DNA of 63,341 bases, the filler included, from Octopus bimaculoides (Eukaryota): the NCBI RefSeq assembly GCF_001194135.2. It is 4 parts of 4 records of this genome, joined end to end, with 100 filler letters (N's around TTAATTAATTAA, not from the genome) between each part and the next. Parts side by side here need not be neighbours in the genome. Positions count along the whole stretch, not along the records: positions 16,713 to 34,054 come from NC_068983.1; 3 more parts are not named here. The stretch is one strand, 5' to 3'. A program made the position numbers and the translations under genes. Shown here piece after piece: positions 16,713 to 34,054 of the stretch (the stretch's first letter is position 1; each line of letters opens with the position of its first letter). The notes under the pieces are model-generated. The model worked only from the letters and a program-made list of their open reading frames with translations. It had not been told where the DNA came from and made no database searches.

Positions 16713-16869
16713 GTCACTATAGTAACTCAATAACTGATCAGGGCTGGAGAATTTTGTTTTTGTTTGTCTATATGTCAATCGAAAACCGAGTTATGGTGGT
16801 TCGTATGTTGCTAGTGTTTATATATATATATATATAATCAAAAAAAGCAACACGGATTTTAAAGGTTAT

Positions 16870-16957
16870 TGCAGTACGCACGTTTCATGCTACTCCATTT
16901 ATTTAAGTAATGCGAGCATTACATTGAATGCAAAATGCAGAGCAATCTTCAGCTGCA
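16870..16957 (-). ncRNA. Candidate minimal type I hammerhead ribozyme (Penelope-like terminus)
   Basis: UGCAG-CUGAAGA-UUGCU...AGCAU-GAAA-CG-UG-CGUA-CUGCA. Stem I is UGCAG/CUGCA, stem III is ACG/CGU and the site is GUA. Confidence 0.5.
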
Positions 16958-19413
16958 CAAAGATATAGAAAATTTTCTGAAAACTTCAGCAGAATGGACA
17001 TATTACTATTGTGGCAACATTTAAAATCTAAGTGGGAATAAGAATACATAAAAGAACCATCTTGACATAGCCAAGGCTACGCAATGGAATAGGGATTTTA
17101 AATCCGGGCAGATATCTCATGAGCACTCTGGTAAAATCCAGACTTCGCTAGTTACATCAAATGACAGAAAACATTTAGAATCGTTTAGAATGAACAATTA
17201 AACTATGCTTCCTTTGACTGCTAGATCCTGACGTCGCTTCAATGGATTTCATGAAGGATACAGAGAATATCATCAAGACATAATAATGAAAATTGGGGAG
17301 TTATACGTCTTCAAAATATATTTATTAAGAAGCATTTTCTTTATATTACATTCCGACACGTGTTTCTGCTAAATAAGTGTCTTAGGATCCTTTGATATAA
17401 TAGTTTTGTGCATTTAGTCGTTTTATATTAAATCAATTATAGTACACGTTCAAATCCAAACCTTAACAATCCTATACAGCTTACTCGGTATATGTTCCAT
17501 ACGGGTGGGTGAAGCGCGAACTGAAGATTCAAGTATTAAACATAAGTTCCTAAAATACACTCTTGCTGAGGGAATATAAAACATTAGGTAAAAGACAGTG
17601 GAGATAGCAGTATATGATAATATATCCCGATCCATTTAAGGTGCCTCCTTCTAAGAGTAATTATCTGTTTCCATAATATCTGTAATGGTCATTACGCTTA
17701 AATAAAACCAGTACTATGTACATATCGTGTCTGATAGGAAATCTTTTACATGTTTATCCAAAATGTACAATTTTGTAATTCCTATTAGCAAATGAAACAT
17801 GTGTAGTGAAGAATAAATGATATTTTCTAGCTTCTTGTCTTGATATATAATATGTCTGCAAACAATATTTCCAAAATTTTCAACTCTAATATGATAGGTA
17901 CCTCACATAACTATAACAACTAGATTGTAATGCTGGATTGTAATACTGAAATATGCAGATGTGCTTCAAGACAACACAGCTTGGACATTAACCCTACCTA
18001 CATTATATACATGTGTGTGTGCGTGTGTATGTGTATAAATATATATATGTATGTATATATATATATATATATATNNNNNNNNNNNNNNNNNNNNNNNNNN
18101 NNNNNNNNNNNNNNNNNNNNNNNNNNNNNNNNNNNNNNNNNNNNNNNNNNNNNNNNNNNNNNNNNNNNNNNNNNNNNNNNNNNNNNNNNNNNNNNNNNNN
18201 NNNNNNNNNNNNNNNNNNNNNNNNNNNNNNNNNNNNNNNNNNNNNNNNNNNNNNNNNNNNNNNNNNNNNNNNNNNNNNNNNNNNNNNNNNNNNNNNNNNN
18301 NNNNNNNNNNNNNNNNNNNNNNNNNNNNNNNNNNNNNNNNNNNNNNNNNNNNNNNNNNNNNNNNNNNNNNNNNNNNNNNNNNNNNNNNNNNNNNNNNNNN
18401 NNNNNNNNNNNNNNNNNNNNNNNNNNNNNNNNNNNNNNNNNNNNNNNNNNNNNNNNNNNNNNNNNNNNNNNNNNNNNNNNNNNNNNNNNNNNNNNNNNNN
18501 NNNNNNNNNNNNNNNNNNNNNNNNNNNNNNNNNNNNNNNNNNNNNNNNNNNNNNNNNNNNNNNNNNNNNNNNNNNNNNNNNNNNNNNNNNNNNNNNNNNN
18601 NNNNNNNNNNNNNNNNNNNNNNNNNNNNNNNNNNNNNNNNNNNNNNNNNNNNNNNNNNNNNNNNNNNNNNNNNNNNNNNNNNNNNNNNNNNNNNNNCATT
18701 AAAAAGCCGTATGGCCAAACGCGAATCAGATGTTGAACGCTAGTGATATGACGAAGCTGGACAGAGAAAAAACAGTTCGTCTCGCCTTCATAGTGGCTGG
18801 ACCGGTCTTTCTTTATTCCTGGATGCGCTACTGTATGTATGCGGGTGTATATTCATCTATCTATCTATGAATCTGACTGTGAGAGTGTATATATGCGTTT
18901 GTTTGGGAGAGTGCGCGTATGTAGACGCGCTTGCACACCGACATCTAGTCTCCGTGTACGTATGTGTATATGTCAGTGTACGTGTATGTATGTATTAGGG
19001 TCTGTGCATTCTGTTGTGTGTCTATGTATACGTGCAGTATGTTTTGTGTGTGTGTTTGTGTGTGTGTGTGTACATGTCTATGTACATGTATAACATTGTG
19101 TGTATATGTATATATTATGTACTTCCGACTACGTGATTTTGACTATGTATGAGTTGACCTCTGTGTGTGTGTCTGTGTCTGTGTCTGTGTGTGTTCGTGT
19201 GTGAGCGTGTGTGTGTGTGTGCGTCCATGTGCGTGTGTTTGGGTGCGTGTGTGTTCCTAGCCATCTTCACAGCCTGTATTTACTAGTATCATGCTATGAT
19301 GGATACTACAAGGAGACACCCAGCTCCATCACTTCCTCAAATACTTCAATATCTCACGTCTTAACCCTGATTCCGTTTTCACTCATCACACCATTGTTAT
19401 TGAACAGATATAT

Positions 19414-19460
<47 letters not shown>

Positions 19461-19841
19461 ATATATATTTGAAAAGAATTAATGGAAATGGCTTTTATGA
19501 TCATTTTTCCACTCTAATAATTAAATGTTTATAAGTAATTATTAAAGTGGAAAAATAATCAGAAAAGCCATTTTTATNNNNNNNNNNAAGCCATTTTTAT
19601 TCATTTTTTCAAATATATAATACTGTACCAAAGATTTTCTATTTCTTATTCTACTACATGCATACATACATACATGCATACATACATACATTCATACATA
19701 CACGCACGCACGCACGCACACACACACACACACACACACACAGAATTAAGCACATAAGTGCAAAACAAGGTGGAAAAAATAGTACTTGAATACCAAAAGT
19801 TAAGTAATATACTTTTTATAAAAGCTGCAAAATTACCTCAG

Positions 19842-19883
19842 AACCCTTACTCAGAATTTCACGTTCCCGTTCGTCGGACAATT
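19842..19883 (-). ncRNA. Degenerate minimal hammerhead-like motif
   Basis: AAUUGU-CCGACGA-ACG-GGAA-CGU-GAAA-UUCUGAGUA-AGGGUU. The core has C at position 4 and stem I has a mismatch. Confidence 0.35.
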
Positions 19884-20246
19884 GTGATAAATATTTATCT
19901 GTTCTGTGATAATTTTGCAGTTTATATGTGTGTGTGTGTGTGTGTGTGTGTATACACGCATATTATTTATAATTTTCAATTTTATCGTTTTTGAAATCAG
20001 TGTATGATCTTAACGGAAATTTTATAAGCTAAAAAAGCAAGATGAGTTTAACCCTTGGCGTGGTGAGGGTCACTGATGAGTGTTAAGATGCATTAAGCAT
20101 CAGAACGCGAAATCATCGATGATCTGGCTGCGTCTGCGACCATAACGAGCTTGTCTCCCTTGTCAAGTCATGAAAATAGTGCTTTTGTTGGCTATTGGGT
20201 GGTTTTGACTCTTATTTCTAGCAATACTAGTACTGGTAAATATATA

Positions 20247-20640
20247 CAGGGTGCGTAAGATATTTGAGGACAGATTTATGTTTTTTTTAAAAAAAAACAA
20301 ATATAATGACAGATAAAATCTTTATTTATCAAAAAATGCTATGAGAATAAAAATAAACCTTTTCTATAATGTTATTCAATAAAGCTTCAACAAGTGTTTC
20401 TATATGAGATCCAAATTATGCTTGAATCAAGTAGTCCTGGTTCATTTTGGACATTACACTGACTATGGCAGCTTTCAAAGAATCTTTGGTGTTATGGACG
20501 TCTTTATTGACCTCTCTTTCAACAACGTTCCACATGTAATAGTCCAATGGATTGAGATCTGGGGAATTAGGAGGCCAAATGTTAGGGGTTATGTGATCAT
20601 GAAAATTTTCAGCCATCCATTCTTGTGTTACTAGAGCCAT
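20247..20640 (-). mobile_element. Tc1/mariner (ITm, maT-like) 3' fragment with one terminus
   Basis: ORF 20416-20640 contains WPPNSPDLNPLDYYMWNVVE. TA followed by CAGGGTG at 20245-20253. The other end is cut by (GATA)n at ~20644. Confidence 0.8.
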
Positions 20641-20644
20641 GTGT

Positions 20645-20700
<56 letters not shown>

Positions 20701-20859
20701 CGATGGGCTTTTTTTTCAGTTTCCGTCTACCACATCCACTCACAAGGCTTTGGTCGGGCCGAAGTTATAGTACAAGACACAAGCTGCATGCAGTGAGATT
20801 GAATTCGAAACCAGGTGGTTGGGAAGCAAATTTCTTACTACACAGACAAGCCTGCGCCT
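20701..20859 (-). mobile_element. tRNA-derived SINE family C, head portion
   Basis: CAGTTTCCGTCTACCACATCCACTCACAAGGCTTTGGTCGG...GGTTGGGAAGCAA...CCTGCGCCT, matching 29221-29642. Confidence 0.8.
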
Positions 20860-20919
20860 TACTTGGCAAAGAAATAAAAGTTATTTGAATGCGAACTCTG
20901 ATCGCTTCATTAATGATTT

Positions 20920-21127
20920 CTAAGTTTGACACAAGTCAACAAATTTAGAAGTGGGTAAATCGATTACATCGACTCCAGTGCTCGACTGGTACTTATTTTA
21001 TCGACCCCGAAAGGATGAAAGTAAAATCAACTTAGATTGAGCCATTGAACTCAGTACGTAAAGCCGGAAAAAATGCTTCTGAGCATTTTGTGCAACGTGC
21101 TAACTATTCTGCCAGCCAGGCACCTTG
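20920..21127 (-). mobile_element. SINE family A
   Basis: CTGGTACTTATTTTATCGACCCCGAAAGGATGAAAG and CTATTCTGCCAGCC. Confidence 0.8.
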
Positions 21128-21179
21128 TTCGATCTCCCCATTAATGAGGGAGCGGATCTGATAGTTCACTAGGGAGATC

Positions 21180-21310
21180 CTTCCGAGATCGACTTTGCCT
21201 TTCATCCTTTTGGGGTCGATAAAATAAGTACCAGTTGAGTACTAGGGTAAATGTAATCGACTTAAACCCTCCCCCGAAATTACTGGTCTTGTGCCAAAAT
21301 TTGAAATCAA
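21180..21310 (+). mobile_element. SINE family A, 5'-truncated, inverted relative to 20920-21127
   Basis: GATCGACTTTGCCTTTCATCCTTTTGGGGTCGATAAAATAAGTACCAG...TTGTGCCAAAATTTGAAATC. Confidence 0.8.
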
Positions 21311-21981
21311 TATTTGGGAGGGAGGATATTTGTCTTACGGTATCTGATGAGCTCAAACACAATCTCATTTCATTGACCAACGGGATCCAGCTGACGATGA
21401 TAGGGTCCAATGTTAGCATGGGCAATATCATCATCAATAGGAAGAGTAAACCCTGCACAGAGTGGAATAAATACAAGGACAGGTAGAAATAAATATTTCA
21501 CGTATCCTCTNNNNNNNNNNNNNNNNNNNNNNNNNNNNNNNNNNNNNNNNNNNNNNNNNNNNNNNNNNNNNNNNNNNNNNNNNNNNNNNNNNNNNNNNNN
21601 NNNNNNNNNNNNNNNNNNNNNNNNNNNNNNNNNNNNNNNNNNNNNNNNNNNNNNNNNNNNNNNNNNNNNNNNNNNNNNNNNNNNNNNNNNNNNNNNNNNN
21701 NNNNNNNNNNNNNNNNNNNNNNNNNNNNNNNNNNNNNNNNNNNNNNNNNNNNNNNNNNNNNNNNNNNNNNNNNNNNNNNNNGTCACCTTTATTGAACTGA
21801 AAATGTCTGACTGTGACAGACCAGCAGTACTTAGCTTTGCTTCAAACTGCTTTACTTTAACATTACAAATACTGGTCGAAACTGCAGAGTTGCCATATTT
21901 ATTTATAGAAAACACTTCACACCACCAAATTAGGTTGTGACTAACTGGCTGACTGACTGACTATCATTATTAATATTGCTA

Positions 21982-22054
<73 letters not shown>

Positions 22055-23620
22055 TACAGTATTTGCCGGATCTAAAAAATGATATCGACACCAGTCTCAG
22101 CTTGATCTCAGACAATTCTAATGTAACAGCCACCACTTTTCATTGTTCAGCAACATAGAGTATTCTTAGTCCTAAATCTCTGGAACATACAAGAAAATAA
22201 TTTTGTATACATCACATATATATACATATATAGATAAATCTATCTATCTATATATATAACTTCAGAAATCAGGTATGTTCAAATAATTATCTTTTGATTT
22301 CAACACCTTCTAGAAAAGTTTTTTTTTTACTTTAACTGAAAGATTCAACGTGTACGTAAGTGTAGCTGTGTGCATATGTGTAGCTCTGTGTGTGTATGTG
22401 TGTGTGCGTGTGTGTAATATTTTTTTTAATCATTTGAGTCATTGAACCCTGAAGTATGACATTTCATTATATTGATCCCAGTACTCAATGTGGTATTAAT
22501 TTTATCGATCTCTATCAATCGAAACGCTATGCCAATGTGTTTCAGTAGTATTCTGCCGACTCATCAATGATTAGGGGTCGTTTTAACTTCATTTTTCATG
22601 TTGTTATAGTTGTTATTGTTGTTACTGCTGCTACTGTTGTTGTTGATGTTGTTTTGTTGTTTACCCCCAGGTCAGACTTATCATCGATGTTATTCAAACT
22701 ATCTGGAACTACAGTTTAAAATGTATCCTTCCCGTTTTAAGATGGTAGCAAATATTTCAAGAGCAATTTGCCTGTTATTTCTAACAGGTAGAGTTATCGC
22801 ACCCATTCGTTAACTTATATTTAGTTAACTAATTATATGATATGTGAGAGAAAAAGAGGGCGAGAGAGTTAAAATAGAACAACACATCTGTAAAACTAAT
22901 ACATTACAGTTTCATCCAAGTCGTCTAGTAGTTAAAATTCTGCGTTCAACGAATTCTGTATTACATTTTGAACGATACATTGATAAGTAACAAATTACAG
23001 GTATATGTATCTGTTTGTGTATTATGGATCATTTTGTTCCCTTCCTCATCGTTTTCGTTTTTTAGTGTCTATCTTAGCCGTTCGTCTGTCAGTTGCTGAT
23101 GTAAAGACAAAATTCGTCTTCCATATTTCTGTTTCTATTTTTCAGCGTTTATGATGGTCATCCATCAACCAAAAGTAAGGTATTAAAGTAAAAGACAAAA
23201 GACTGTTTATCTTTTCCTTTGTACAACATTTACTCTTAAAACCAACCTTTACCAGGCTCTGTGCAGTTTTATTATCCAAAGTATGAGAATTATCTGTTGC
23301 GTATGAGTTATTGAACGATGTTTTTCTCCAAGAATCAACCATAATGTGAATTCAGGCAGTTTGATTCAAAAACTCGAAAAACTGAAGAATCTCCATGAAA
23401 AAGAACCAATTGGAATCGTTATAAATTACTTTTCTTCACATCGTACGAGCAACTGATTCTCTTTTGTGCAATCTATTAACTGATATTTGCTGATATAGAT
23501 CATCACTACTTATTGTTTGTATATTTTTTAGTGTAGTGGTTTTGTTTCAGCTAATATATATTGGCATATCTCATGATTAATCCATAGGTACCTTCTTTCT
23601 CCTCTGTTTTTGCTTTACTA

Positions 23621-24890
23621 TCAGGTCATCCCATAAGTTCTGTCCGATTTTACCTTTCTTTTTAAATTGAATGAAATTTGATAGTATTTTAGAATGTCTA
23701 ATGGATTTTAAAATTATCTTCATGCATTTGTGTACATTTAAACTAATTAAATATTATTTTACAGAATAATAGAATTAAAATTTCTTTGATTAAAACCCTT
23801 TCTAACATGGAAGTATCCAAAGAGCATTTGAGGCACATAATGCTTTATGAGTACAAAAAAGGAAACTCTGCAGCCGAAGCAACTCGAAACATATACTCAG
23901 TTTATGGGAAATAATACTTGAATGAAAAAACTTGCAGAAGATGGTTTGCAAAATTCAGAAGATGAAGATCGAACAGAACGTCCAGTTGAGTTTGATGATA
24001 AGCTCCTTGAGGCATTACTTGAAGAAACTTCTGCATTATTAGTTGAAGAATTGGCAATAAAGCTTAGTTCAAACGACACAGCTGTTCATCGTCATCTTCA
24101 ACAACTTGAAAAGGTTCCTAAACTTGGAAAATGGGTGCCTCATGAATTGTCCGAAAGCAACCGCAAATCCTGAGTTGACATCTGCTCTTCTCTCCATTCT
24201 CGCGAACTCATTTCGCCTTTTTTGGATAGACTTGTGACTGATGACGTAAAATGGATCTTCTATCGAAATGTTAAACGTCGTAAACAGTGGCTTGGTAAAA
24301 GGGAAAAAGCTCAACCACAACCGAGAAGGGAACTTAATGGGGAAAAGGTTATTCTCTCTATCTAGTGGGGTTGCAAAGGAGTAATTCACTTTGAACTGTT
24401 ACCACCTAATGCAACAATCAATGATCAAGTCTACTGTCAGCAATTAGAGCGTTTGAACCAAGCTTTGAAGAAAAAAAATATCCGCTTTAATGAATCGAAA
24501 AGGAGTGATGTTTCATCAGGACAATGCGTGACCCCACACTGCTAAGATCACATCACAGAAGATCGAAGAGCTTGGTTGGGAAAAAATTCCTCATCCATCT
24601 TATTCTCCCGACCTTGCTCCTTCAGACTACCATTTGTTTCGTAGTTTACGGAATTATTTGCGGGTATAATTTTCGCAAGCCGGGTGGAGGTCGAAACTGA
24701 CATTTCGGAGTTCTTCGGTTTGAAACTAAAAGTGTTTTACATTGATGGGATTAAAAAGCTTGTAAATAGATGAAAGAAAGTCATAGATAATCAGGGAAAG
24801 TACATTGATGATTAAATTTCATTTAAATATAACATTTGATCACTTGTTTTCTATATTCAAAATTCGGACAGAACTTATGGGATGACCTGA
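23621..24890 (+). mobile_element. Full-length mariner transposon (1270 bp) with perfect 27-bp TIRs and TA duplication
   Basis: TIR TCAGGTCATCCCATAAGTTCTGTCCGA at 23621-23647 and its exact reverse complement at 24864-24890. TA at 23619-20 and 24891-92. Confidence 0.95.
23807..24815 (+). pseudogene. Mariner transposase pseudogene
   Basis: MEVSKEHLRHIMLYEYKKGNSAAEATRNI start, then LGKWVPHEL, LVTDDVKWI, FHQDNA and PHPSYSPDLAPSDYHLFRSL. Several stops and frameshifts. Confidence 0.92.
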
Positions 24891-25012
24891 TATATTGACA
24901 CCAACTTGGCAAAGTGTGCGTTGTCCTAATACATTATGTATGTATGCTTATATATGTGTGTATTTATGTATGTATAAATGCATTTATGTTTGCGTGCATG
25001 CACGTAAGCATG

Positions 25013-25116
<104 letters not shown>

Positions 25117-25614
25117 TTTTCTGCTTTTAATTTTTGAATCTCTCACCAATGGAGAAAGAAAATGTTTCCTGCCTTCCATTGAGATTTAAATATCATCTGG
25201 GCAATCATGCATATGTACTTTTACTTGGAGATTTAAGTTTTCTCTCTTTGCAGAATTCAAGTTAGTGACTTCAGAGTGGCATGGTTCTTTTGTTTAAGTC
25301 AAGCTGTATGTATGTATAACTATATCAGTTTATGTATATTTGTGTGCACACATGTATGCATGTATATATGTATGCACATACATATGAATGTGCTCGCGCA
25401 CACGTGGTTTCGTGTATGAATGTCATTGCATTAGACGTGTTCCATGTGTGTATGAATTATTTCTTGGAGGCTTTATTTAAGTTTTTCCTTTGCAGAATTC
25501 AATCTGGTCACTAACAAAGTTTAAGTCAAGACAGTTCAGCGTGTGGATGCTTGAATTTGTTAGTGTGTGCATGTATGTTTATTTGGTCACGCGTTCGACC
25601 AAGAAACTTCAAAT

Positions 25615-26285
25615 GGAGAATCCCAAGAATGTTTTGCAAATTTTTATTGTAATACTAATCTATAATATTTGAAGAATGTAATTCAGTCAACTTTGCTCTT
25701 TCTTGGATACCCTTGCATTCCACGCTTGTATACAAATCAGTTGTTACATAGCCCGGTAATATGATAATAGGTACAAATGAACATCTATTGCAAGGATATA
25801 AGAGCTGTTGGTTTGTCAATAGTCATCCACAGTTGTTCGCCTTTTTCCCAATTTTTGATGAGACATTTAACATCCGCCTAGCCGCTGATCGCTTCATCAG
25901 AGCATCATTTTTATACCCCGTAAAAAATATCTGATCTATTGTATTTACACCGAGTTTCTGCTTTTATTGGAACATTCCACCAGTGTTCTTTATTTTTATG
26001 TGTGTATACGTTCTGGTTCTGGCGTGTCTTTGGGATCAGACCATGATTTAGTGACGATGTCACATTTCATGAAAATAATATCTTGCGGATATTTTTGGAC
26101 AGCTACTAATGATATTAGGAATATCTTCCATAATCGACATTTTCTATCACAACGTAGAAGTCTAGATGCATCCGGGTCTCTCTTGTTGATTATATATTTA
26201 GTAGATAACTACTGTTCGTGGATAGAAAATGCGTAGCCTTCTTGGCGAGATAAGATGTATTTATCGCACGTCCAGGAGAAATTAT
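25615..26285 (-). pseudogene. RLE-clade non-LTR retrotransposon C-terminal fragment (a different lineage from the 11.4 kb copy)
   Basis: Minus strand MEDIPNIISSCPKISARYYFH, KEHWWNVPIKAETRCKYNRSDI, FVPIII and terminal KICKTFLGF. Confidence 0.7.
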
Positions 26286-26336
26286 TATTCCTGTTACTAA
26301 TGTTGATATTCTTTAGTTTGCGGGATATGTATCTAT

Positions 26337-26580
26337 CTTTTATCTTTTATCATTTATCTTTTACTTGTTTCAGTCATTAAACTGCGGTCATGCTGGGACA
26401 ACCCAGGACTTATTTGTTCTAAGCTTGGTATATGTTCTATCGGACACCTTTTGCCGAACCGCTGTTTACCGGGACGTAAGCACACCAGCTTTGGTTGTCA
26501 AGCAGTGTTAGGGGATAAACAAACGCGCACACACACACACACACATACACACACACACACACATACATACATATATAAAT
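26337..26580 (-). mobile_element. SINE family C, tail portion
   Basis: TTTTACTTGTTTCAGTCATTAAACTGCGGTCATGCTGG...TTTTGCCGAACCGCT...GGTTGTCAAGC, as in 29221-29642. Confidence 0.75.
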
Positions 26581-26619
26581 ACATATATATAATATAGTTC
26601 TATATTTAAGAGATGAGGA

Positions 26620-26828
26620 ATTATGCACATTATTTACATTATTTACATTTGACGGATATTTGTCCTCATCTTGTTTGTTGTTAACACAACGTTTCGGCTG
26701 ATATACTCTCCAGCCTTCATCGGGTGTCTTGGGGGTTCTCATTCCTAAGGTATTTTTTGATGTTATTATTATTATTATTATTATTATTCAGGTCACTGCC
26801 TTGAATCGAACTCGGAATCTTGGGGTTA
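26620..26828 (-). mobile_element. Composite element: tRNA-like 3' half, (AAT)n, hammerhead-bearing segment and (AATGTAAAT)n tail
   Basis: Minus strand TAACCCCAAGATTCCGAGTTCGATTC (B box), (AAT)8, CATCAAAAAATACCTTAGGAATGAGAACCCCCAA, the hammerhead motif, then AAATGTAAATAATGTAAATAATGT. Confidence 0.55.
26683..26728 (-). ncRNA. Minimal type I hammerhead ribozyme of Penelope-like type (palindromic stem III; U4C variant)
   Basis: GACAC-CCGAUGA-A-GGCUG-GAGAGUAUAU-CAGCC-GAAAC-GUU-GUGUU. Stem II is 5 bp, stem I is 5 bp and stem III is the palindrome ACGU. Confidence 0.6.
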
Positions 26829-26907
26829 AGAGCGCAGGCTACTAACCCCAAGATTCCGAGTTCGATTCCATGCAGTGACCTGAACAATAATAATAATAAT
26901 AATAATA
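26763..26907. repeat. Near-perfect inverted repeat of a tRNA-like head plus flanking (TTA)/(AAT)
   Basis: Arm 26763-26828 vs arm 26843-26907, with spacer AGAGCGCAGGCTAC. Confidence 0.9.
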
Positions 26908-27361
26908 NNNNNNNNNNNNNNNNNNNNNNNNNNNNNNNNNNNNNNNNNNNNNNNNNNNNNNNNNNNNNNNNNNNNNNNNNNNNNNNNNNNNNNNNNNNNN
27001 NNNNNNNNNNNNNNNNNNNNNNNNNNNNNNNNNNNNNNNNNNNNNNNNNNNNNNNNNNNNNNNNNNNNNNNNNNNNNNNNNNNNNNNNNNNNNNNNNNNN
27101 NNNNNNNNNNNNNNNNNNNNNNNNNNNNNNNNNNNNNNNNNNNNNNNNNNNNNNNNNNNNNNNNNNNNNNNNNNNNNNNNNNNNNNNNNNNNNNNNNNNN
27201 NNNNNNNNNNNNNNNNNNNNNNNNNNNNNNNNNNNNNNNNNNNNNNNNNNNNNNNNNNNNNNNNNNNNNNNNNNNNNNNNNNNNNNNNNNNNNNNNNNNN
27301 NNNNNNNNNNNNNNNNNNNNNNNNNNNNNNNNNNNNNNNNNNNNNNNNNNNNNNTATATAT

Positions 27362-27500
27362 ACACGACAGGCTTCCTTCAGTTTCCATCTACCAAATCCA
27401 CTCGCATTCGTCGACCCGAGGCTATAGTGGAAGAAAATTGCCCAAGGTGCCGCACATTGGGACTGAACCCGGAACCATGTGGTTGGGAAGCAAACTTTTT
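27362..27500 (-). mobile_element. SINE family C, head portion
   Basis: CAGTTTCCATCTACCAAATCCACTC...GGGACTGAACCCGGAACCATGTGGTTGGGAAGCAA. Confidence 0.8.
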
Positions 27501-27664
27501 GTCACAGTCTCACCTGAGCTTATGCATAACTTTCAGCTGATATGATGTGTATTTCTCCTCCAAGTCGCTATTTAAATAGGTCAAACCAACCAATCTTAGC
27601 TCATTTAGATAGAACAGCATACTCAGGATACTATTTCATTCATACATACCTATTTACCTAAATA

Positions 27665-28467
27665 CAGGGTGTCCCAAAAGTCACCGATGGTTTCAATTTT
27701 TAATAACTTCCTGAACGTTATAAATAAATGCATGAAATTTTGATACAATATAAAGGACATACTGGAAATTAATATGCATAAGTCAAATTGTGCAACACCA
27801 CTACATCACATATGAAAAATGACATCGCTTAAACGGCAGCCATTTTCGACTTCACATGCCCGTGCTCTTTCCAAACCTTGCACCATAATACCCTCAAGAG
27901 TTTCAGACCCCACTTCTCTGATTTATCTATTAATGTTCTTCAGTTGCTCCAGAGTCTCCGGTTTTTTTACGTAGATCCTCTCTTTCAGGTATCCCCCACA
28001 AGAAAAAATACGGGTTAGTCAAGTCTGGGGAACGTGAAGGCCATTCAAAGTAGACCTCACACATGGTTCCAGCAAGATGAGGCAACTGCTCATACCGCAA
28101 GAAAAACAATGCAGTTGCTACGGTAGTGCTTTGGAGAGAGAATAATCTCCCGCTACGGCAATGTTAACTGGCCTTCACGTTCCCCAGACTTGACTAGCCA
28201 GGATTTTTTCTTGTAGGGAAACCTGAAAGAAAGGGTTTACGTCAGCAATTCGGAGTCCCTTGTGCAACTGAAGGAGAACATCAATAGAGAAATCAGAGAA
28301 GTGGGGTCTGAAACTCTTGAGGGTGTTATGGTGCAAGGTTTGGAAAGAGCACGGGCGTGCGAATCCGAAAATGGCTACCATTTAAGCGATGTTATTTTTC
28401 ATATGTGACGTAGTGGTGTTGCAAAATTTGACTTGTGCATATTAATTTCCATTATGTCCTTTATATT
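27665..28467. mobile_element. Palindromic Tc1/mariner (ITm) derivative made of two transposase 3' ends
   Basis: TA followed by CAGGGTGTCCC at the left end. Arms 27747-28043 and 28169-28467 are reverse complements. Plus strand reads WFQQDEATAHTAR...WPSRSPDLT...LKERVYV. Confidence 0.85.
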
Positions 28468-28499
28468 TTAGAAAACTTATTTCTGTCTCTTCTCTCATG

Positions 28500-28785
28500 C
28501 ACGTCTATCTTAAGCGTTCATAATAACTTTTCTATCGTCTTGGCTTAACAACCCTCACTGTTTGTTTTACTGTCTTGTTCTCACTGTCTTGTTCTTGTTA
28601 ACACTTTCACCCTCCGCAAAAGATTCCAAATTTTATTTAATTTGCTTTGCGGGAAGGACTGTTCCAACAAAGTCGCGTATTGTCCTTGCCTTCGAAACGC
28701 GAAGTAGATGGAACAAGGACAACTGACGAAGGGTTATACTCTTTATGGTGCATGTCTCGTTTCTCTGTTTGTTTGTTTTGGGATG
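28500..28785 (+). mobile_element. Interspersed repeat family H (copy 2)
   Basis: Homologous to the reverse complement of 40-480. Boundaries are approximate. Confidence 0.55.
28673..28733 (+). ncRNA. Candidate hammerhead ribozyme, non-circularly permuted (copy 2)
   Basis: UCGCGU-A-UUGUCCUUG-CCUUC-GAAA-CGCGA-AGUAGAUGGAA-CAAGGACAA-CUGACGA-AGGG. Stem III is 6 bp, stem I is 9 bp, the site is GUA and stem II is weak. Confidence 0.6.
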
Positions 28786-29220
28786 AACCTGAAACCGTGC
28801 GGTTGGGAAGCAAGCTTTTTACCACTCAGACAGATGGTTTAAATAATAGATATTATGTAAGATGTGATATTGTATGAGTTAATATTACCTAAGGGGTGAC
28901 ATTGTTTAAGGTCTGACACAAGATGTGACGTTTTGTAAGATATAACAGTATATAAGATGTGACGTTACGTGGCATAAAGGTAGCATTGTGCCTTTTACAG
29001 AAACTATTGCATTGCTTCATTAGTGTTATTGCGTATGAGGCAGTAAAGGTCGTATGATGTAAAGGTCGCATTTCGTAAGGAGTGACATTAAATAAGAGTG
29101 ACATTGCAAAACGGAGATATTGCGAAACGGATGAAAATATGTGTGGATGGCATTACGTAGGTGTGGAAATTTCTCAAAAAGTTTTTTATATAAGGATTCG
29201 TTAGGGAGGTTTATATTTGA

Positions 29221-29642
29221 TTACTCTTTTACTCTTTTTACTCTTTTACTTGTTTCAGTCATTTGACTGCGGCCATGCTGGAGCACCGCCTTTAGTCGAG
29301 CAAATCGACCCCAGGACTTATTCTTTGGAAGCCTAGTACTTATTCAAACGGTCTCTTTTGCCGAACCGCTAAGTTACGGGGACGTAAACACACCAGCATC
29401 GGTTATCAAGCGATGGTGGGGGACAAACACAGACACACAAACACACACACACATGTATATATATATACATATATATACGACGGGCTGTTTTCAGTGTCCG
29501 TCTACCAAATCCACTCACAAGGCTTTGGTCGGCCCGAGGCTATAGTAGAAGACACTTGCCCAAGGTGCCACGCAGTGGGACTGAACCCAGAACCATGTGG
29601 TTGGTAAGCAAGCTACTTACCACACAGCCACTCCTGCACCTA
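29221..29642 (-). mobile_element. Full-length SINE family C (tRNA head, CORE-like segment, internal CA/TA microsatellite, repeated tail)
   Basis: Minus-strand A box GTGGCTGTGTGG, B box GGTTCAGTCCC, GGCACCTTGGGCAAGTGTCTT and tail (GAGTAAAA)n. Confidence 0.85.
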
Positions 29643-29850
29643 TATTGGTCATTTATTTCATTAGAAGTGATTAAATCCAGAGCAAGGAATGTTTAGGTTG
29701 AGTATAGAGAAGAATCTAGGATATTTTGAGGGACGGCGTTATATATGATGAGGCTGAACGTTGTTGTTGTTTAGCGCCAGATCAATGTTATTATCAAAAA
29801 TGTTCAAGTCGTGACCACCTTGTCTTTCTTTTCAGATATAGTGTATCTAT

Positions 29851-30237
29851 GTGGAGGCGCAATGGCCCAGTGGTTAAGGCAGCGGACTCGCGGTCATAGG
29901 ATCGTGGTTTCGATTCCCAGACTGGGCGTTGTGAGTGTTTATTGAGCGAAAACACCTAAAGCTCCACGAGGCTCCGGCAGGGGATGGTGGTGAACCCTGC
30001 TGTACTCTTCCACCACAACTTTCTCTCACTCTTTCTTCCTGTTTGTGTTGTACCTGTATTTCAAAGGGTCAGCCTTGTCACACTGTGTCACGCTGAATAT
30101 CCCCGAGAACTACGTTAAAGGTACACGTGTCCGTGGAGTGCTCAGCCACTTGCACGTTAATTTCACGAGCAGGCTGTTCTGTTGATCGGATCGACTGGAA
30201 CCCTCGACGTCGTAAGCGACGGAGTGCCAACAAGACA
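29851..30237 (+). mobile_element. Full-length tRNA-derived SINE family B with 10-bp TSD
   Basis: A box TGGCCCAGTGG, B box GTTTCGATTCC and 3' GGAGTGCCAACAAGACA. TSD AGTGTATCTA at 29840-29849 and 30238-30247. Confidence 0.9.
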
Positions 30238-30834
30238 AGTGTATCTAAAACTGCATTGTTCAAAACTTCCAAAAGTGTAAGATGCCACAGTAATGGTAAT
30301 ATTTAACAAAAAGTCATTAAAAGCAATGCTTTTTAAAACTTACTCTTGACCAAACTTTATTCCCTGTGGATTATGCCAAAATTTAATTCTTAGATTCGAA
30401 ACTTTTTCATAACATTCTTCTCAACTCTGAACCCAACATTAGCAAACGTTAACGGACGTAACTAAATACTGGAAATGCATTTAATTCGGCATTCTTCCAG
30501 TCTACCCCTTTGGTAAGTTAAGTCATGTTGACTCTAAGAAATATATAGCATAAAATCTTTGGGGTACGTGTGTGTGTTTGAGTACGTGTTAGTGTACTTA
30601 TGTCTATTTGTATATATGTAAGTGTATGAGTGTGTATGTTGTGTTGTTTGTGGTGTGAAATGCTGGACATAAATGAGAATTTTGTCATCTTTTTCATTTC
30701 GAGTTTTAAAAAACCTACCGAAATCAATTTCATAGTAAAATCAACGATGCATTGGTATCGAATCGATCGATTGTGTCTTCCACAAACTTGTAATCGTGCT
30801 GCAATCATTATTTTGAAACTGACTTGACAGTGAA

Positions 30835-31045
30835 CTGACAGAATCGTTAGCGCGTCGGACAAAATGCTTAGCGAAATTTTTTCCGGTTGTTTACGTTCTG
30901 AGTTTCAAATTCCGCCGAGGTCAACTTTGTTTTTTATCCTTTCATTATCACTAATAAAATAAAGTACCAGTCAAGTATTGGTGTCCATGTAATCAACTTG
31001 CCCCCTCCCCTCAAAACTATTGACCTTGTGCTGAAATTAAAAAGA
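30835..31045 (+). mobile_element. SINE family A
   Basis: CAGAATCGTTAGCG...GAGTTTCAAATTCCGCCGAGGTCAACTTTG...AAAGTACCAGTC...CTTGTGCTGAAATT. Confidence 0.8.
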
Positions 31046-31304
31046 ACTATTTCGAAACTGACTGTAGTAGAATCGTTAGCGTATCGTGCAAACTGTATTT
31101 CATTCAGGTCCTTTACGTTAATTAATGTTGAGTTCGATACTGAGAAATATGAAAAATTAGAAAAGTTTCGAATCTGAAGAATTGATTACAAGCATAATCG
31201 AAAAGAAAGAGAGACTGGGCAAGAGTTTTAAGTACATATAAAACTATAAAACTCTAATTCCTATACATTATTGTCAAAAATTACCGTTATTGTGGCATTC
31301 TACT

Positions 31305-31428
31305 ACCTTGGAAGCATTGAATAATGCGGTCCTGAATACACTATATCTAAAAAGAAAGATAGAGTGGTCCCGACCAGAACGCTTTTGATAAGAGAACTGA
31401 TCTGGGGCGGCGAAGCAACAACAGCAAC
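31305..31428 (-). mobile_element. Unclassified interspersed repeat (family E); uninterrupted counterpart of 29760-29849/30248-30280
   Basis: The reverse complement matches CCAGATCA..TTATCAAAA..GACCAC..TCTTTCTTTT(C/T)AGATATAGTGTAT and continues across the SINE B insertion site. Confidence 0.6.
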
Positions 31429-31627
31429 GACATTTTCACTACCGTCAGACTCTCCTGATTCAATTCTATATTCATCCTTAAGCAGTCCTTACCCTGAATC
31501 ACATCAGTTCTGATTCAGCTATATCGAAACAACATTGTCCCGTATATCCCACCTTTTTTTTTTTTTTTTTATCAGCGGGATTGATTTGTGGAAGTTGTTG
31601 CTGCTATTTCTAACAGGTCGAGTGACT

Positions 31628-31683
<56 letters not shown>

Positions 31684-32029
31684 GCGCGTGCGTCTGTGTG
31701 TTTGAGTATGTATTAGTGTTTATGCGTTTGTGCATGTTCTAGGGAGTGTTAGTTTGTGTGTTTGTACTCTGTGTATGAATGCGTTTGTGAAAGAAAGTAG
31801 ACAGATAAAGAGGGAGAGTAATTTGAGATGGAAAGAGAGAGAATAATTAAGTGAGCAATAACAAGCAGGTGTCATACTTGAAGTCCTTCTTTGCTAACAA
31901 GACAAGTCTACTTCCAATAATGTACACAACACTACAGATGTGTACATTTTACTGTCGGTCTTACAAAAAACAAAATGAAGCAACACTCGAACGGGACACC
32001 AAAGAAACAATAACAATGGAAACTATAGG

Positions 32030-32165
32030 AGAATCGGCAGAGTCGTTAGACTGTCGGAAAGAATATTTCGTGGCATTTTCTTTGATTCTCAACGTTCTGG
32101 GATCAAATCCGCCGATGTCAACTGTGTCTTTCATCTTTTTTGAGGTCGATAAAAATGTGCCAATC
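32030..32165 (+). mobile_element. Degenerate SINE family A
   Basis: GGCAGAGTCGTTAG...GGATCAAATCCGCCGATGTCAACTGTGTCTTTCATC...GAGGTCGATAAAA. Confidence 0.65.
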
Positions 32166-32199
32166 CTGGGTGATTAGAACTGCAGGAATGTCGAACTAG

Positions 32200-33880
32200 A
32201 TACCTAATGGTATTTGGTTCAGCACTTTGTGTCTTGGATGCCTTTAGTAGAGTCCATTCTGTTGCAAGCACTCGGCCAGGTCTCCAGTTTGAAGATACCT
32301 TCTTCCATTCACACCTCCCGCTAGTCTTTATTATTTTGGTGTTCGATATAATCGTCTCCCATCAACATAACAACTCCTCAGTTTTCTACTTCTCATTCAT
32401 AGTTGTGAAACATGGGTTTGATAGGTTTACACACGTCCTTAACAGAATGCTTCCAATAGCTTACTCGCTTTTATTCTCATTTTTTTTTTTTTTTACCTTT
32501 CTCCAAGTTCTATCGTCTCATCGCCAAGACGATGAGAAGATGATGGAGCCTGGAGAAGTGGACAACAAGAATGAGATAGAGTTTGCAACCCTCTAGACGT
32601 CCCTGTTCTAAAGGAAAAGATCACTTGGTTTATCAGTACCCTACATCGTCCCTTACCTGATATTTCGCTCGCCTTTGCCTCTTCTTTGGCTATCCTTACA
32701 GCTCCGACTAAAAGTGCTTCAGAAACATTAATAGCAGCAGCCATAATCTTCCCCTCCGGGGCCTGGTTGTATTGTTGTTGTGGTTGTAATTGTTGCCTCT
32801 GATAATGTCTACCACCCTCTTGTTTCTTACGCTTTCCCTCATCTTCTGAACTGAAAGCTCTCAAATGGCCTTTACTCCAACCTTTATGACCTGCACTACT
32901 AGTGTGACTGACCCCCATCTCTGCTGCTTCAGTGAACTGTAAATCTGAAATAATCTTATTGTTGCTGGTCACCTTCATACTTATATGTTGTACAAAGTTG
33001 ACGAGAAAGCTAGGGTCATCCTTCGTGCTAATATTTCAATTCATAATGCTTGTATTCGTGAGATGCATCAACTGTGGAGTCAGCCTTCAGGAAGGTGTGT
33101 GGTATACTAGTGCTGTCTGTAACCGTATCAAAGATCATTCTTGCTGCTAGCACGTCGGTTGCAATGCTTTTAGTAATCGCCTCTTTCGATGTTTCTGGAG
33201 ATGTACCTGGAGGTACACAAGCAACAGCAGCTTCAGTGGCCTGCAGTTACTGGGCTTTCTTTTCTTTTCTTTTTCTTTTGTTCTTTTTGTCTTGTGCTTT
33301 GTTTTTGTTTGGCGGGAGTTGTTCTTTTTATCTTACGTTTTGTTGTCGTTTTTGTTCTTTTTTTTTCCTGAACTTTTCTAACTCTTCTGAGCAGAAAGCC
33401 CTTAACTTATCCATACTATCACATGCGTAGCAGCTGGGTTTTCTGCCCTGAATATGATATTTTTCTCTAGGTAACCATCAGAGGACACAACTCCGGGGCC
33501 TCTTGTGACGTCATGAAGACTTACCTGTCCTCAGAGACATATCACTCTACTACATATGATCAAAAGTCAAGTCGTTGATAATAACCTGTTCTAATTGTGC
33601 AGGAGTCAACGTTGTGACCGATGACTTTAACATCGGCGACGAAGTTGTTTTGTTGTGACACTAGTCTCTGGACAGGTGTGTGCCACTAACTGAGCATCTC
33701 TCTTCACCCCTTCACTTTTTTAAAAACAGCACCCAGTATGATATATAACCCCGCCCATCAACTGATACAGAAAATCTCGCTCCACATATCCTCAAGTACT
33801 ACCGTCAACTGTTCTTTGAAATGTGCAGAGAATGTTCCTGTGGCTTTAGCAATACACAGTTAAGTTACTTTCTTTTTTGC
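32200..33880 (-). mobile_element. Possible decayed LINE ORF1 region
   Basis: Minus strand HIQGRKPSCYACDSMDKLRAFC (~33390-33455) has CX2CX4[H>K]X4C knuckle spacing, followed by a K/E/R-rich stretch. No RT motif seen; extent uncertain. Confidence 0.3.
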
Positions 33881-33901
33881 GCTTATATGACAGTTTCAGG
33901 A

Positions 33902-34054
33902 GTGGAGGCGCAATGGCCCAGTGGTTAGGGCAGCGGACTCGCGGTCATAGGATCGTGGTTTCGATTCCCAGAACGGGCATTGTGAGTGTTTATTGAGCGA
34001 AAACACCTAAAGCTCCACGAGGCTCCGGCAGGGGATGGTGGCGAAACCCTGCTG
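33902..34054 (+). mobile_element. SINE family B, truncated by scaffold join
   Basis: Near-identical to 29851-30000. Confidence 0.9.

What the first reader, a model, noticed from the sequence alone, without database searches (positions are those of the whole stretch)
28673..28733. Hammerhead ribozyme with non-circularly permuted, fully pseudoknotted strand order
Seen in sequence: all hammerhead core parts are present, namely CUGACGA (28723-29), GAAA (28694-97) and a GUA site (28677-79). Stem III is UCGCGU/ACGCGA (6 bp) and stem I is UUGUCCUUG/CAAGGACAA (9 bp), each abutting the core exactly as required. The order is cleavage strand, GAAA strand, CUGA strand. This is not a circular permutation of types I/II/III, and all three stems cross. 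Established: hammerheads occur at Penelope-like element termini. From memory, a few natural non-circular permutations have been reported, so novelty needs checking. Inference: a cephalopod repeat family encodes a rearranged self-cleaving RNA that standard type I-III searches miss. Weak point: stem II is only G-C plus two G-U, and CCUUC can mispair with GAAGG across the core.
Basis: partly seen in the sequence, partly recalled or inferred. Interest (0 to 1): 0.9.

Follow-up and report, generated by a model that had tools for sequence, protein, structure and literature searches.

The report
Probable chance look-alike of permuted hammerhead
A 61-base stretch of repeat-rich animal DNA carries every hammerhead-ribozyme core word in a rearranged order that was already published in 2023, but one of the three required helices is nearly absent, no related copies could be found, and it is most likely a coincidence.

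Summary
GUA (28677-79), GAAA (28694-97) and CUGACGA (28723-29) are joined by a 9-bp stem I and a 6-bp stem III, in the order cleavage strand, GAAA strand, CUGA strand.

That order is not new. It is the "type SGC" hammerhead of Eckert et al., NAR 2023 (583 sequences, three validated).

The match is unusual for a 17-kb piece: the expected number of chance matches is about 1e-4 to 2e-4. Scaled up, that gives about 30 matches per 2.7-Gb genome in any order and about 7 in SGC order.

The family-specific tests go against it:
- Stem II is only G-C plus two G-U (+3.3 kcal/mol), against 5-6 bp in validated ribozymes.
- The fourth helix that SGC-3 needs for activity is no better than in shuffled sequence.
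- The two strands meant to form stem II pair far better in another register (CCUUCG/CGAAGG, -9.5 kcal/mol), which buries G12, C7, G8 and A9.

I found no second copy in the piece, no Penelope-like element, no Rfam hit and no relative in any searchable collection, so covariation is untestable.

Most likely this is a chance match inside a cluster of short inverted repeats (about 0.75). A genuine type-SGC ribozyme remains possible (about 0.1).

The parts
28673..28688 (+). Putative S block: stem III 3' strand UCGCGU (28673-78, U28678 = U16.1), A28679 = H17 (predicted cleavage 3' of it), stem I 5' strand UUGUCCUUG (28680-88)
   Evidence: Sequence read; helix lengths confirmed by the descriptor scan
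28689..28702 (+). Putative G block: 2-nt linker CC (28689-90), stem II 3' strand UUC (28691-93, C28693 = C11.1), GAAA (28694-97), remainder of the stem III 5' strand CGCGA (28698-702)
   Evidence: As an isolated helix, stem III scores -6.5 kcal/mol
28703..28713 (+). Linker AGUAGAUGGAA between stem III and stem I. In validated type-SGC ribozymes this segment forms a fourth helix with the 3' tail
   Evidence: Its best duplex with the 3' tail is -5.0 kcal/mol, and 64% of shuffles do as well. The validated ribozymes score -6.9 to -15.0
28714..28733 (+). Putative C block: stem I 3' strand CAAGGACAA (28714-22), CUGACGA (28723-29), extra A28730, stem II 5' strand GGG (28731-33)
   Evidence: As isolated helices, stem I scores -9.7 and stem II +3.3 kcal/mol
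28689..28732 (+). Competing helix CCUUCG (28689-94) / CGAAGG (28727-32): 6 Watson-Crick bp between the same two strands as stem II, pairing G12, C7, G8 and A9
   Evidence: RNAduplex finds this register as the best one, -9.5 kcal/mol. In SGC-1, SGC-2 and SGC-3 the best duplex is stem II itself and leaves the core free
28660..28716 (+). Nested alternative hairpin: UGUUCCA (28660-66) / UGGAACA (28710-16), concentric with stem III. The inner CUUCG (28690-94) / CGAAG (28700-04) hairpin is a further competitor
   Evidence: This is the minimum-free-energy fold of the 91-nt context, -23.8 to -25.3 kcal/mol. Stem III has pair probability 0.95 and stem I 0.04 in the nested ensemble
28778..28840 (-). tRNA-like SINE head fragment (A-box and B-box region) lying immediately 3' of the candidate in + strand coordinates and read on the opposite strand; the candidate lies about 45 nt beyond its end
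   Evidence: 80-86% identity to the heads of three full SINE copies at 20694-20848, 27356-27510 and 29469-29630. The bodies do not align

Best explanation
The stretch is a chance match to the hammerhead descriptor, not an evolved ribozyme.

It lies in non-coding, transposon-rich animal DNA, between a rearranged mariner remnant and a SINE head fragment. It sits inside an ~80-nt cluster of short direct and inverted word repeats:
- AAGGAC twice, plus its complement GUCCUU.
- GGAACA and its complement.
- CGAAG twice, plus CUUCG.
- CGCG twice.

Two of these inverted repeats happen to be separated by a single A and to be flanked by GAA and CUGACGA. That reproduces the skeleton of the published type-SGC hammerhead.

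If transcribed, the RNA is predicted to fold into nested hairpins. The two strands that should form stem II are predicted to pair in a 6-bp register that buries G12, C7, G8 and A9, so little or no self-cleavage is expected.

Shown here: the anatomy, the chance rates, the competing pairings, and the absence of a second copy in the piece. Inferred: lack of catalytic activity and lack of biological role.
For: 1. Chance matches of this total quality are expected about 30 times (any order) or about 7 times (SGC order) per 2.7-Gb genome. The piece itself holds 264 word-free three-helix skeletons at least as strong, 57 of them in SGC order.
2. Stem II is 3 bp (one G-C, two G-U) and scores +3.3 kcal/mol as an isolated helix. 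The three validated type-SGC ribozymes have 5-6 bp at -4.3 to -6.6. Disrupting stem II abolished cleavage of SGC-3.
3. There is no credible fourth helix: best duplex -5.0 kcal/mol, matched by 64% of shuffles, against -6.9 to -15.0 in the validated ribozymes. That helix was also required for SGC-3 activity.
4. The best duplex between the two stem-II strands is CCUUCG/CGAAGG (-9.5 kcal/mol), which consumes core residues. In all three validated ribozymes the best duplex is stem II itself.
5. The window is in the top 2-3% of the piece for self-complementary 5- and 6-mers, so stems are cheap here. In 121 nt of context the fold z-score is only -0.41.
6. There is no second copy in the piece, no Rfam hammerhead hit at E<=10, and no RT/GIY-YIG frame nearby.
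7. Eckert et al. state that such pattern searches yield false positives and accepted only candidates with covariation.
Against: - For a single 17-kb piece the match is improbable: 1e-4 to 2e-4 in any order and 4e-5 in SGC order.
- It is the top hit against 3000 shuffles and 2700 decoy cores.
- Several details agree with validated type-SGC ribozymes beyond the core: a 2-nt linker from stem I to stem II, and one extra nucleotide between A9 and G10.1, A here and U in SGC-1, SGC-2 and SGC-3. With the short-linker requirement, the chance expectation drops to about 0.2-0.9 per genome.
- Stems I and III are entirely Watson-Crick.
- The sum of the three isolated helix energies (-12.9 kcal/mol) equals that of the validated ribozymes (-11.6 to -13.0).
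- A singleton type-GCS match in a bacterium did cleave in vitro.
- Family membership could not be tested, because no genome of the source organism was searchable.
Confidence: 0.75

Rival explanations
1. It is a genuine type-SGC hammerhead ribozyme, active or recently decayed, carried by a low- or medium-copy element of an animal genome. It would fold into the triple-crossing structure, with stem I partly open and stem II made of G-C plus two G-U, and cleave 3' of A28679.
For: - The full core is present with all-Watson-Crick stems I (9 bp) and III (6 bp) abutting it exactly.
- It is the best hit against shuffles and decoys.
- With the SGC layout constraints, fewer than one chance match is expected per genome.
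- The local CpG observed/expected ratio is 1.3 against 0.78 for the piece, which could mean young or constrained sequence.
Against: - Stem II and the fourth helix, both shown to be necessary in SGC-3, are respectively marginal and indistinguishable from shuffles.
- The preferred register of the stem-II strands destroys the core.
- There is no second copy, no covariation data and no ribozyme-bearing element context.
- All type-SGC examples reported by Eckert et al. that I could trace carry IMG/M metagenome or metatranscriptome accessions. Their RefSeq-wide search reported no eukaryotic family.
- Restoring a 5-bp stem II would need about four substitutions, including transversions, so simple recent decay is not a parsimonious explanation (sequence).
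Confidence: 0.1
2. It is an accidental ribozyme: not selected for, but close enough to the hammerhead consensus that a small fraction of transcripts cleave at A28679 in vitro, with no biological role.
For: - The hammerhead is a minimal motif that arises easily. The authors of PMC10085705 note that it is a frequent outcome of in vitro evolution.
- The singleton GCS-1, which had no covariation support, cleaved in vitro.
- Stems I and III tether both stem-II strands to the junction.
Against: The same structural objections apply: a stem II at +3.3 kcal/mol, the competing -9.5 kcal/mol register, nested folds of -24 to -25 kcal/mol, and no helix IV.
Confidence: 0.1
3. The self-complementary cluster is a functional or structural part of something else. 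One possibility is the body of a variant SINE transcribed from the minus strand. Another is a hairpin-forming non-coding RNA. On either reading the hammerhead words are incidental.
For: - On the minus strand a tRNA-like SINE head (28840-28778) lies just upstream, and an (AACAAG)-like simple-repeat stretch (28604-28560) lies downstream. Together they would give a SINE-sized unit of about 270 bp.
- A concentric hairpin with 15/19 complementary arm positions centres on stem III.
Against: - The body matches no other sequence in the piece, although three full SINE copies are present.
- The only Rfam matches are SNORA38 at 15 bits (E 0.47) and hairpin ribozyme at 12.5 bits (E 4.3), both far below threshold.
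- The fold z-scores are modest.
Confidence: 0.05

Closest known systems
Type-SGC hammerhead ribozymes (HRIMA-1 motif and type-SGC variants; Eckert, Friedrich, Weinberg & Weinberg, NAR 2023, PMC10085705)
   Same: - Identical block order: cleavage-site block, GAAA block, CUGAnGA block.
- All three helices cross.
- Full conserved core.
- Short (2-nt) linker from the stem I 5' strand into the stem II 3' strand.
- One extra nucleotide between CUGAnGA and G10.1.
- Stem III of 5-7 bp in the validated examples, 6 bp here.
   Different: - Validated members have a 5-6 bp, G-C-rich stem II; here it is 3 bp with two G-U.
- They have a 6-8 bp or longer fourth helix between the G-to-C linker and the 3' tail; here there is none above the shuffle level.
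- Their stem-II strands prefer the productive register; here they prefer a register that buries the core.
- They show abundant covariation; none is obtainable here.
- The published accessions come from metagenomes and metatranscriptomes, proposed to be circular RNA replicons that also carry hairpin ribozymes, not an animal chromosome.
Type-GCS hammerhead singleton GCS-1 of Caballeronia peredens (same paper)
   Same: A single sequence that fits a non-circular permutation descriptor, with no homologues and so no covariation. The authors called its biological relevance unclear.
   Different: GCS-1 has a clean 4-bp Watson-Crick stem II (GACC/GGUC), long stems I and III, and partial cleavage demonstrated in vitro. 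The present candidate has a weaker stem II and is untested.
Type I hammerheads of Penelope-like elements and metazoan retrozymes (Cervera & de la Pena 2014; Lunse et al. 2017; from my own knowledge)
   Different: Those are circular-permutation type I motifs (order C-G-S), located in pseudo-LTRs beside an RT/GIY-YIG gene or in tandem repeats. Here the order is S-G-C, no such gene or repeat is present, and the Rfam hammerhead models give no hit.

Membership tests
Hammerhead ribozyme (any topology) | Conserved core: C3 U4 G5 A6 N7 G8 A9; G12 A13 A14; A15.1-U16.1 pair; H17 (not G) at the cleavage site | tested here: met
   CUGACGA 28723-29; GAA 28694-96; A28697-U28678; A28679
Hammerhead ribozyme (any topology) | Stems I and III abut the core directly | tested here: met
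   Stem I has 9 Watson-Crick bp, 28680-88/28714-22. Stem III has 6 Watson-Crick bp, 28673-78/28697-702. There are no spacer nucleotides
Hammerhead ribozyme (any topology) | A stable stem II beginning with G10.1-C11.1 | tested here: not met
   Only G-C, G-U and G-U after skipping A28730, scoring +3.3 kcal/mol as an isolated helix. The same strands prefer CCUUCG/CGAAGG at -9.5 kcal/mol, which pairs G12, C7, G8 and A9
Hammerhead ribozyme (any topology) | Site-specific, Mg2+-dependent self-cleavage abolished by core mutations | not testable with these tools
   Needs an in vitro transcription and cleavage assay
Hammerhead ribozyme (any topology) | Covariation supporting the helices across homologues | not testable with these tools
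   No homologue was found in the piece, in the metagenome scan, in the viral scans or through protein-word and exact-ORF routes. A positive control with a SINE reading frame also failed, so the protein route cannot see this genome's repeats
Type-SGC hammerhead (Eckert et al. 2023) | 5'-to-3' order: S block, G block, C block | tested here: met
   S block 28673-88, G block 28689-702, C block 14 28714-33
Type-SGC hammerhead (Eckert et al. 2023) | Stem I joined to stem II by a short linker, typically 3 nt | tested here: met
   The linker is CC (2 nt). Rebuilt SGC-1, SGC-2 and SGC-3 give 0-2 nt by the same maximal-extension measure
Type-SGC hammerhead (Eckert et al. 2023) | Stem II of about 5 bp, required for activity (SGC-3 mutants M4/M5) | tested here: not met
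   3 bp here against 5-6 bp in SGC-1, SGC-2 and SGC-3; the mutational requirement is
Type-SGC hammerhead (Eckert et al. 2023) | Fourth helix tying stems I and II together, between the G-to-C linker and the 3' tail, required for activity (SGC-3 mutants M8/M9) | tested here: not met
   The best duplex is -5.0 kcal/mol and 64% of shuffles are as good. AGUA/UACU offers only 4 bp. The validated ribozymes score -6.9 to -15.0
Type-SGC hammerhead (Eckert et al. 2023) | Extra nucleotide between CUGAnGA and G10.1 (seen in all three validated sequences; my reading of the oligo table) | tested here: met
   A28730 here; U in SGC-1, SGC-2 and SGC-3
Penelope-like-element hammerhead | Type I motif inside a pseudo-LTR next to an RT / GIY-YIG reading frame | tested here: not met
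   No Rfam hammerhead hit at E<=10 in the whole piece. Stop-free segments show only DDE_3 and HTH (mariner) matches. The Pfam scan covered only the ten longest or most relevant segments, not all six frames

The most novel reading that the evidence does not exclude
The stretch is the first type-SGC (non-circularly permuted, fully pseudoknotted) hammerhead found in an animal chromosome. It would belong to a so-far-unrecognised repeat, lying beside a tRNA-SINE head fragment, and would work with an unusually short G-U-rich stem II.
Probability: 0.08. Interest if true: 0.75.

Novelty: not a real feature. Interest (0 to 1): 0.25.

Why it matters
If genuine, this would move non-circularly permuted hammerheads from uncultured RNA replicons in metatranscriptomes into animal genomes. 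It would also show that retroelement-style repeats can carry ribozymes invisible to all standard type I-III models.

As it stands, the main value is a caution. A complete hammerhead core with two perfect helices can arise by chance several times per large genome. The discriminating features are the quality of stem II, the fourth helix, the preferred pairing register and covariation, not the presence of the core words.

Tried and rejected
- Rfam cmscan of the whole piece and, with laxer filters, of 28620-28790. No hammerhead hit appeared, only sub-threshold SNORA38 and hairpin-ribozyme matches.
- Search for a second copy in the piece (blastn, word size 7, and the repeat finder). Only the adjoining SINE head fragment repeats.
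- Search for relatives elsewhere. The metagenome pattern scan gave two bacterial coding-sequence chance hits that lack the S block. The viral scans gave none.
- Protein-word search of the reading frame across the candidate. It found nothing. A positive control with a SINE reading frame also found nothing, so that route is blind to this genome's repeats and the negative result carries no weight. Exact look-up of ten reading frames also found nothing.
- Attempt to retrieve natural type-SGC examples from viral contigs for a larger family profile. None was found. The supplementary alignments are images, so only SGC-1, SGC-2, SGC-3 and GCS-1 could be rebuilt.
- Covariance model of type SGC. Rejected, because all three helices cross and a covariance model can represent only one of them.
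- Two arguments I first favoured and then dropped after calibrating against the validated ribozymes. The first was 'the nested minimum-free-energy fold is about 10 kcal/mol better than the sum of hammerhead helices'; this is equally true of SGC-1 and SGC-2. The second was 'a 9-bp stem I is sterically incompatible with a 2-nt linker'; SGC-3 can extend stem I to 8 bp with a 0-nt linker by the same measure.
- A canonical reading with the local hairpin 28730-28742 as stem II. Rejected because no GAAA follows it.
- The other loose descriptor hits at 20007-20129, 24125-24246, 31097-31260 and 28006-27865 (minus strand). They are weak: stems of 2-4 bp or a single long helix. One lies in a mariner TGDEKW-type codon stretch.
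- Host identification from the mariner pseudogene. Inconclusive.

Full report
**Observation.** The sequence at 28673-28733 (+) reads UCGCGUA UUGUCCUUG CC UUC GAAA CGCGA AGUAGAUGGAA CAAGGACAA CUGACGA A GGG.
- GUA is at 28677-79, GAAA at 28694-97 and CUGACGA at 28723-29.
- Stem III is 6 Watson-Crick bp (28673-78/28697-702), and its junction pair is the canonical A15.1-U16.1.
- Stem I is 9 Watson-Crick bp (28680-88/28714-22).
- Both stems abut the core with no spacer.
- Stem II is only G28731-C28693, G28732-U28692 and G28733-U28691, and only if A28730 is treated as an extra nucleotide after A9.
- The three helices cross one another, so the order of strands is not a circular permutation of types I, II or III.

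**The layout is already known.** Eckert, Friedrich, Weinberg and Weinberg (NAR 2023, PMC10085705) divided the hammerhead into an S block (cleavage site), a G block (GAAA) and a C block (CUGAnGA). They showed that the non-circular order S-G-C occurs naturally: 583 sequences, copious covariation, and cleavage at the predicted site. They also described type CSG and a single type-GCS sequence. The candidate has exactly the SGC order, so the permutation itself is not novel. What would be new is an example in an animal chromosome. A full-text search found no paper reporting that.

**Chance.** I wrote a descriptor that accepts all six block orders, contiguous Watson-Crick or G-U helices abutting the core, and zero or one extra nucleotide after A9. 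It scores G-C 3, A-U 2 and G-U 1.
- The candidate is the best hit in the piece, with score 43 (stem I 22, stem II 5, stem III 16).
- None of 3000 dinucleotide shuffles reached 43.
- On the real sequence, the true core words rank first among 2700 decoy cores made by permuting the letters of CUGANGA and GAAA, 43 against the next best 37.
- 600,000 Markov-1 contexts give P(score >=43) = 1e-5 per CUGANGA, about 1e-4 per piece, which holds 14 CUGANGA.
- A semi-empirical null counts word-free three-helix skeletons with the right junction lengths on the real piece. It finds 264 with score >=43, 57 of them in SGC order. Multiplying by the composition probability of the core words (7.5e-7) gives 2e-4 per piece in any order and 4e-5 for SGC order.

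Scaled to a 2.7-Gb genome, this is about 30 and about 7 chance matches. Adding the short linker from stem I to stem II brings it to roughly 0.2-0.9. So the hit is unusual for one piece but not beyond what a large genome produces by chance. The original authors likewise expected false positives from pattern searches and accepted only candidates with compelling covariation.

**Calibration against validated ribozymes.** I rebuilt SGC-1, SGC-2 and SGC-3 from the published oligonucleotide table and measured them with the same code.

Two of my initial objections did not survive this. The validated ribozymes also have nested minimum-free-energy folds far more stable than the sum of their hammerhead helices. 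They can also extend stem I to 6-8 bp with a 0-2 nt linker. I dropped both arguments. The candidate also shares with them the extra nucleotide after CUGAnGA.

Three features do discriminate:
1. Stem II is 5-6 bp and scores -4.3 to -6.6 kcal/mol in the validated ribozymes. Here it is 3 bp and +3.3 kcal/mol.
2. The fourth helix, between the G-to-C linker and the 3' tail, scores -6.9 to -15.0 kcal/mol in the validated ribozymes. Here the best duplex is -5.0 kcal/mol, and 64% of shuffles do as well.
3. In all three validated ribozymes, the best duplex between the two stem-II strands is stem II itself and leaves the core free. Here the best duplex is CCUUCG (28689-94) / CGAAGG (28727-32) at -9.5 kcal/mol, which pairs G12, C7, G8 and A9.

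Disrupting either stem II or the fourth helix abolished cleavage of SGC-3.

**Local structure.** The region is a tangle of short repeated words.
- AAGGAC occurs at 28655 and 28715, with its complement at 28682.
- GGAACA occurs at 28710, with its complement at 28660.
- CGAAG occurs at 28700 and 28727, with its complement at 28690.
- CGCG occurs twice.

This gives several mutually exclusive folds. One is a hairpin concentric with stem III (UGUUCCA/UGGAACA). Another is a nested stem I plus a CUUCG/CGAAG hairpin. A third is a 3' hairpin that sequesters G8 through G10.3.

The window is in the top 2-3% of the piece for self-complementary 5- and 6-mers and the top 5% for CpG. Fold z-scores are -2.4 for 81 nt and -0.4 for 121 nt.

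**Context.** The piece looks like a draft animal genome. It has N gaps, microsatellites and GC of about 0.35.
- It holds mariner/DDE transposase pseudogenes at 23747-24700 and 20419-20715. An inverted duplication of a mariner C-terminus lies at 27736-27939/28275-28478, just upstream of the candidate.
- Three full copies of a tRNA-derived SINE lie on the minus strand, with simple-repeat tails. A head-only fragment of it lies at 28778-28840, next to the candidate.
- The candidate itself has no second copy in the piece.
- No reverse-transcriptase or GIY-YIG frame is present.
- No canonical hammerhead is detected anywhere in the piece.
- If the candidate belonged to a variant SINE sharing that head, the hammerhead reading would be antisense to the SINE transcript.
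- The host lineage could not be confirmed. The closest named mariner relatives come from Oratosquilla, Limulus and Octopus, and the best (91%) comes from an unnamed sequencing-run assembly.

**Relatives elsewhere.** None could be found.
- The viral scans were empty.
- The protein-word and exact-ORF routes were empty. A positive control with a SINE reading frame was also empty, so these negatives say nothing about copy number.
- Covariation, the decisive criterion, is therefore untestable with the tools at hand.

**Verdict.** The stretch is a formal match to the published type-SGC hammerhead. It fails the two family features shown experimentally to be required (a real stem II and the fourth helix), and its stem-II strands prefer a register that destroys the core. 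It has no detectable family and no ribozyme-bearing element around it.

My estimates are:
- About 0.75 that it is a chance match inside a cluster of short inverted repeats.
- About 0.1 that it is a genuine type-SGC ribozyme or a relic of one.
- About 0.1 that it is an accidental sequence with some in vitro cleavage but no role.
- About 0.05 that the hairpins belong to some other element.

A genome-wide copy search with covariation analysis, and a simple in vitro cleavage assay with G5 and G12 mutants, would settle it.

Noticed in passing
window 20694-20848, 27356-27510, 29469-29630 (all minus strand); head-only fragment 28778-28840: A tRNA-derived SINE, with A-box and B-box-like head on the minus strand and simple-repeat tails such as (TATC)n and (TA)n, is present in three full copies 80-90% alike. 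A fourth copy consists only of the head and is followed by unrelated sequence. ARAGORN calls none of them a tRNA.
   Followed up: partly
window 27736-27939 and 28275-28478: An inverted duplication with 204-nt arms, 91% complementary and 335 nt apart. It encodes the C-terminal part of a mariner-type transposase (WPSRSPDLT...FFLWG motif) in both orientations: a rearranged, palindromic transposon remnant.
   Followed up: partly
window 23747-24700 (+) and 20419-20715 (-): Mariner/SETMAR-like transposase pseudogenes with in-frame stops. The first is 91% identical to a protein from an unnamed sequencing-run assembly and 65-75% identical to proteins of Oratosquilla and Limulus. The second gives a weak DDE_3 match.
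   Followed up: partly
window 26357-26570 versus 29242-29478: A second interspersed repeat of about 220 bp (72-93% identity across three blocks). Each copy ends in a microsatellite, and the second directly abuts a SINE copy.
   Followed up: no
window 29851-29997 versus 33902-34048; 29760-29846 versus 31336-31422: A 147-nt direct repeat at 96% identity, 4 kb apart, reaching to within a few bases of the end of the piece. Beside it is an 87-nt inverted repeat at 77%. Probably another repeat family.
   Followed up: no
window 26764-26907: A near-perfect palindrome with 70-nt arms, 93% complementary and a 4-nt spacer, ending exactly at an assembly gap (N run 26908-27354). It could be a foldback element or an assembly artefact.
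   Followed up: no
window 16713-34054, both strands: CTGANGA occurs 14 times against about 6 expected from composition. Loose hammerhead-descriptor matches fall at 5 loci against about 0.3-0.7 expected, the highest count among 2700 decoy cores. The four other loci are individually weak: 20007-20129, 24125-24246, 31097-31260 and 28006-27865 (minus strand). One sits in mariner codons.
   Followed up: partly
window 28724-28770 (-): A hairpin-ribozyme (RF00173) match of 12.5 bits, E 4.3, against a gathering score of 65. It lies on the strand opposite to, and directly beside, the candidate. It is not significant. I note it only because published type-SGC hammerheads were found together with hairpin ribozymes.
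   Followed up: no
window 18007-18077, 19659-19731, 24936-25002, 25328-25393: mir-297 and mir-1277 'hits' of 30-48 bits, well below the gathering scores. They are (TG)n/(TA)n microsatellites folding on themselves, not microRNA genes.
   Followed up: no
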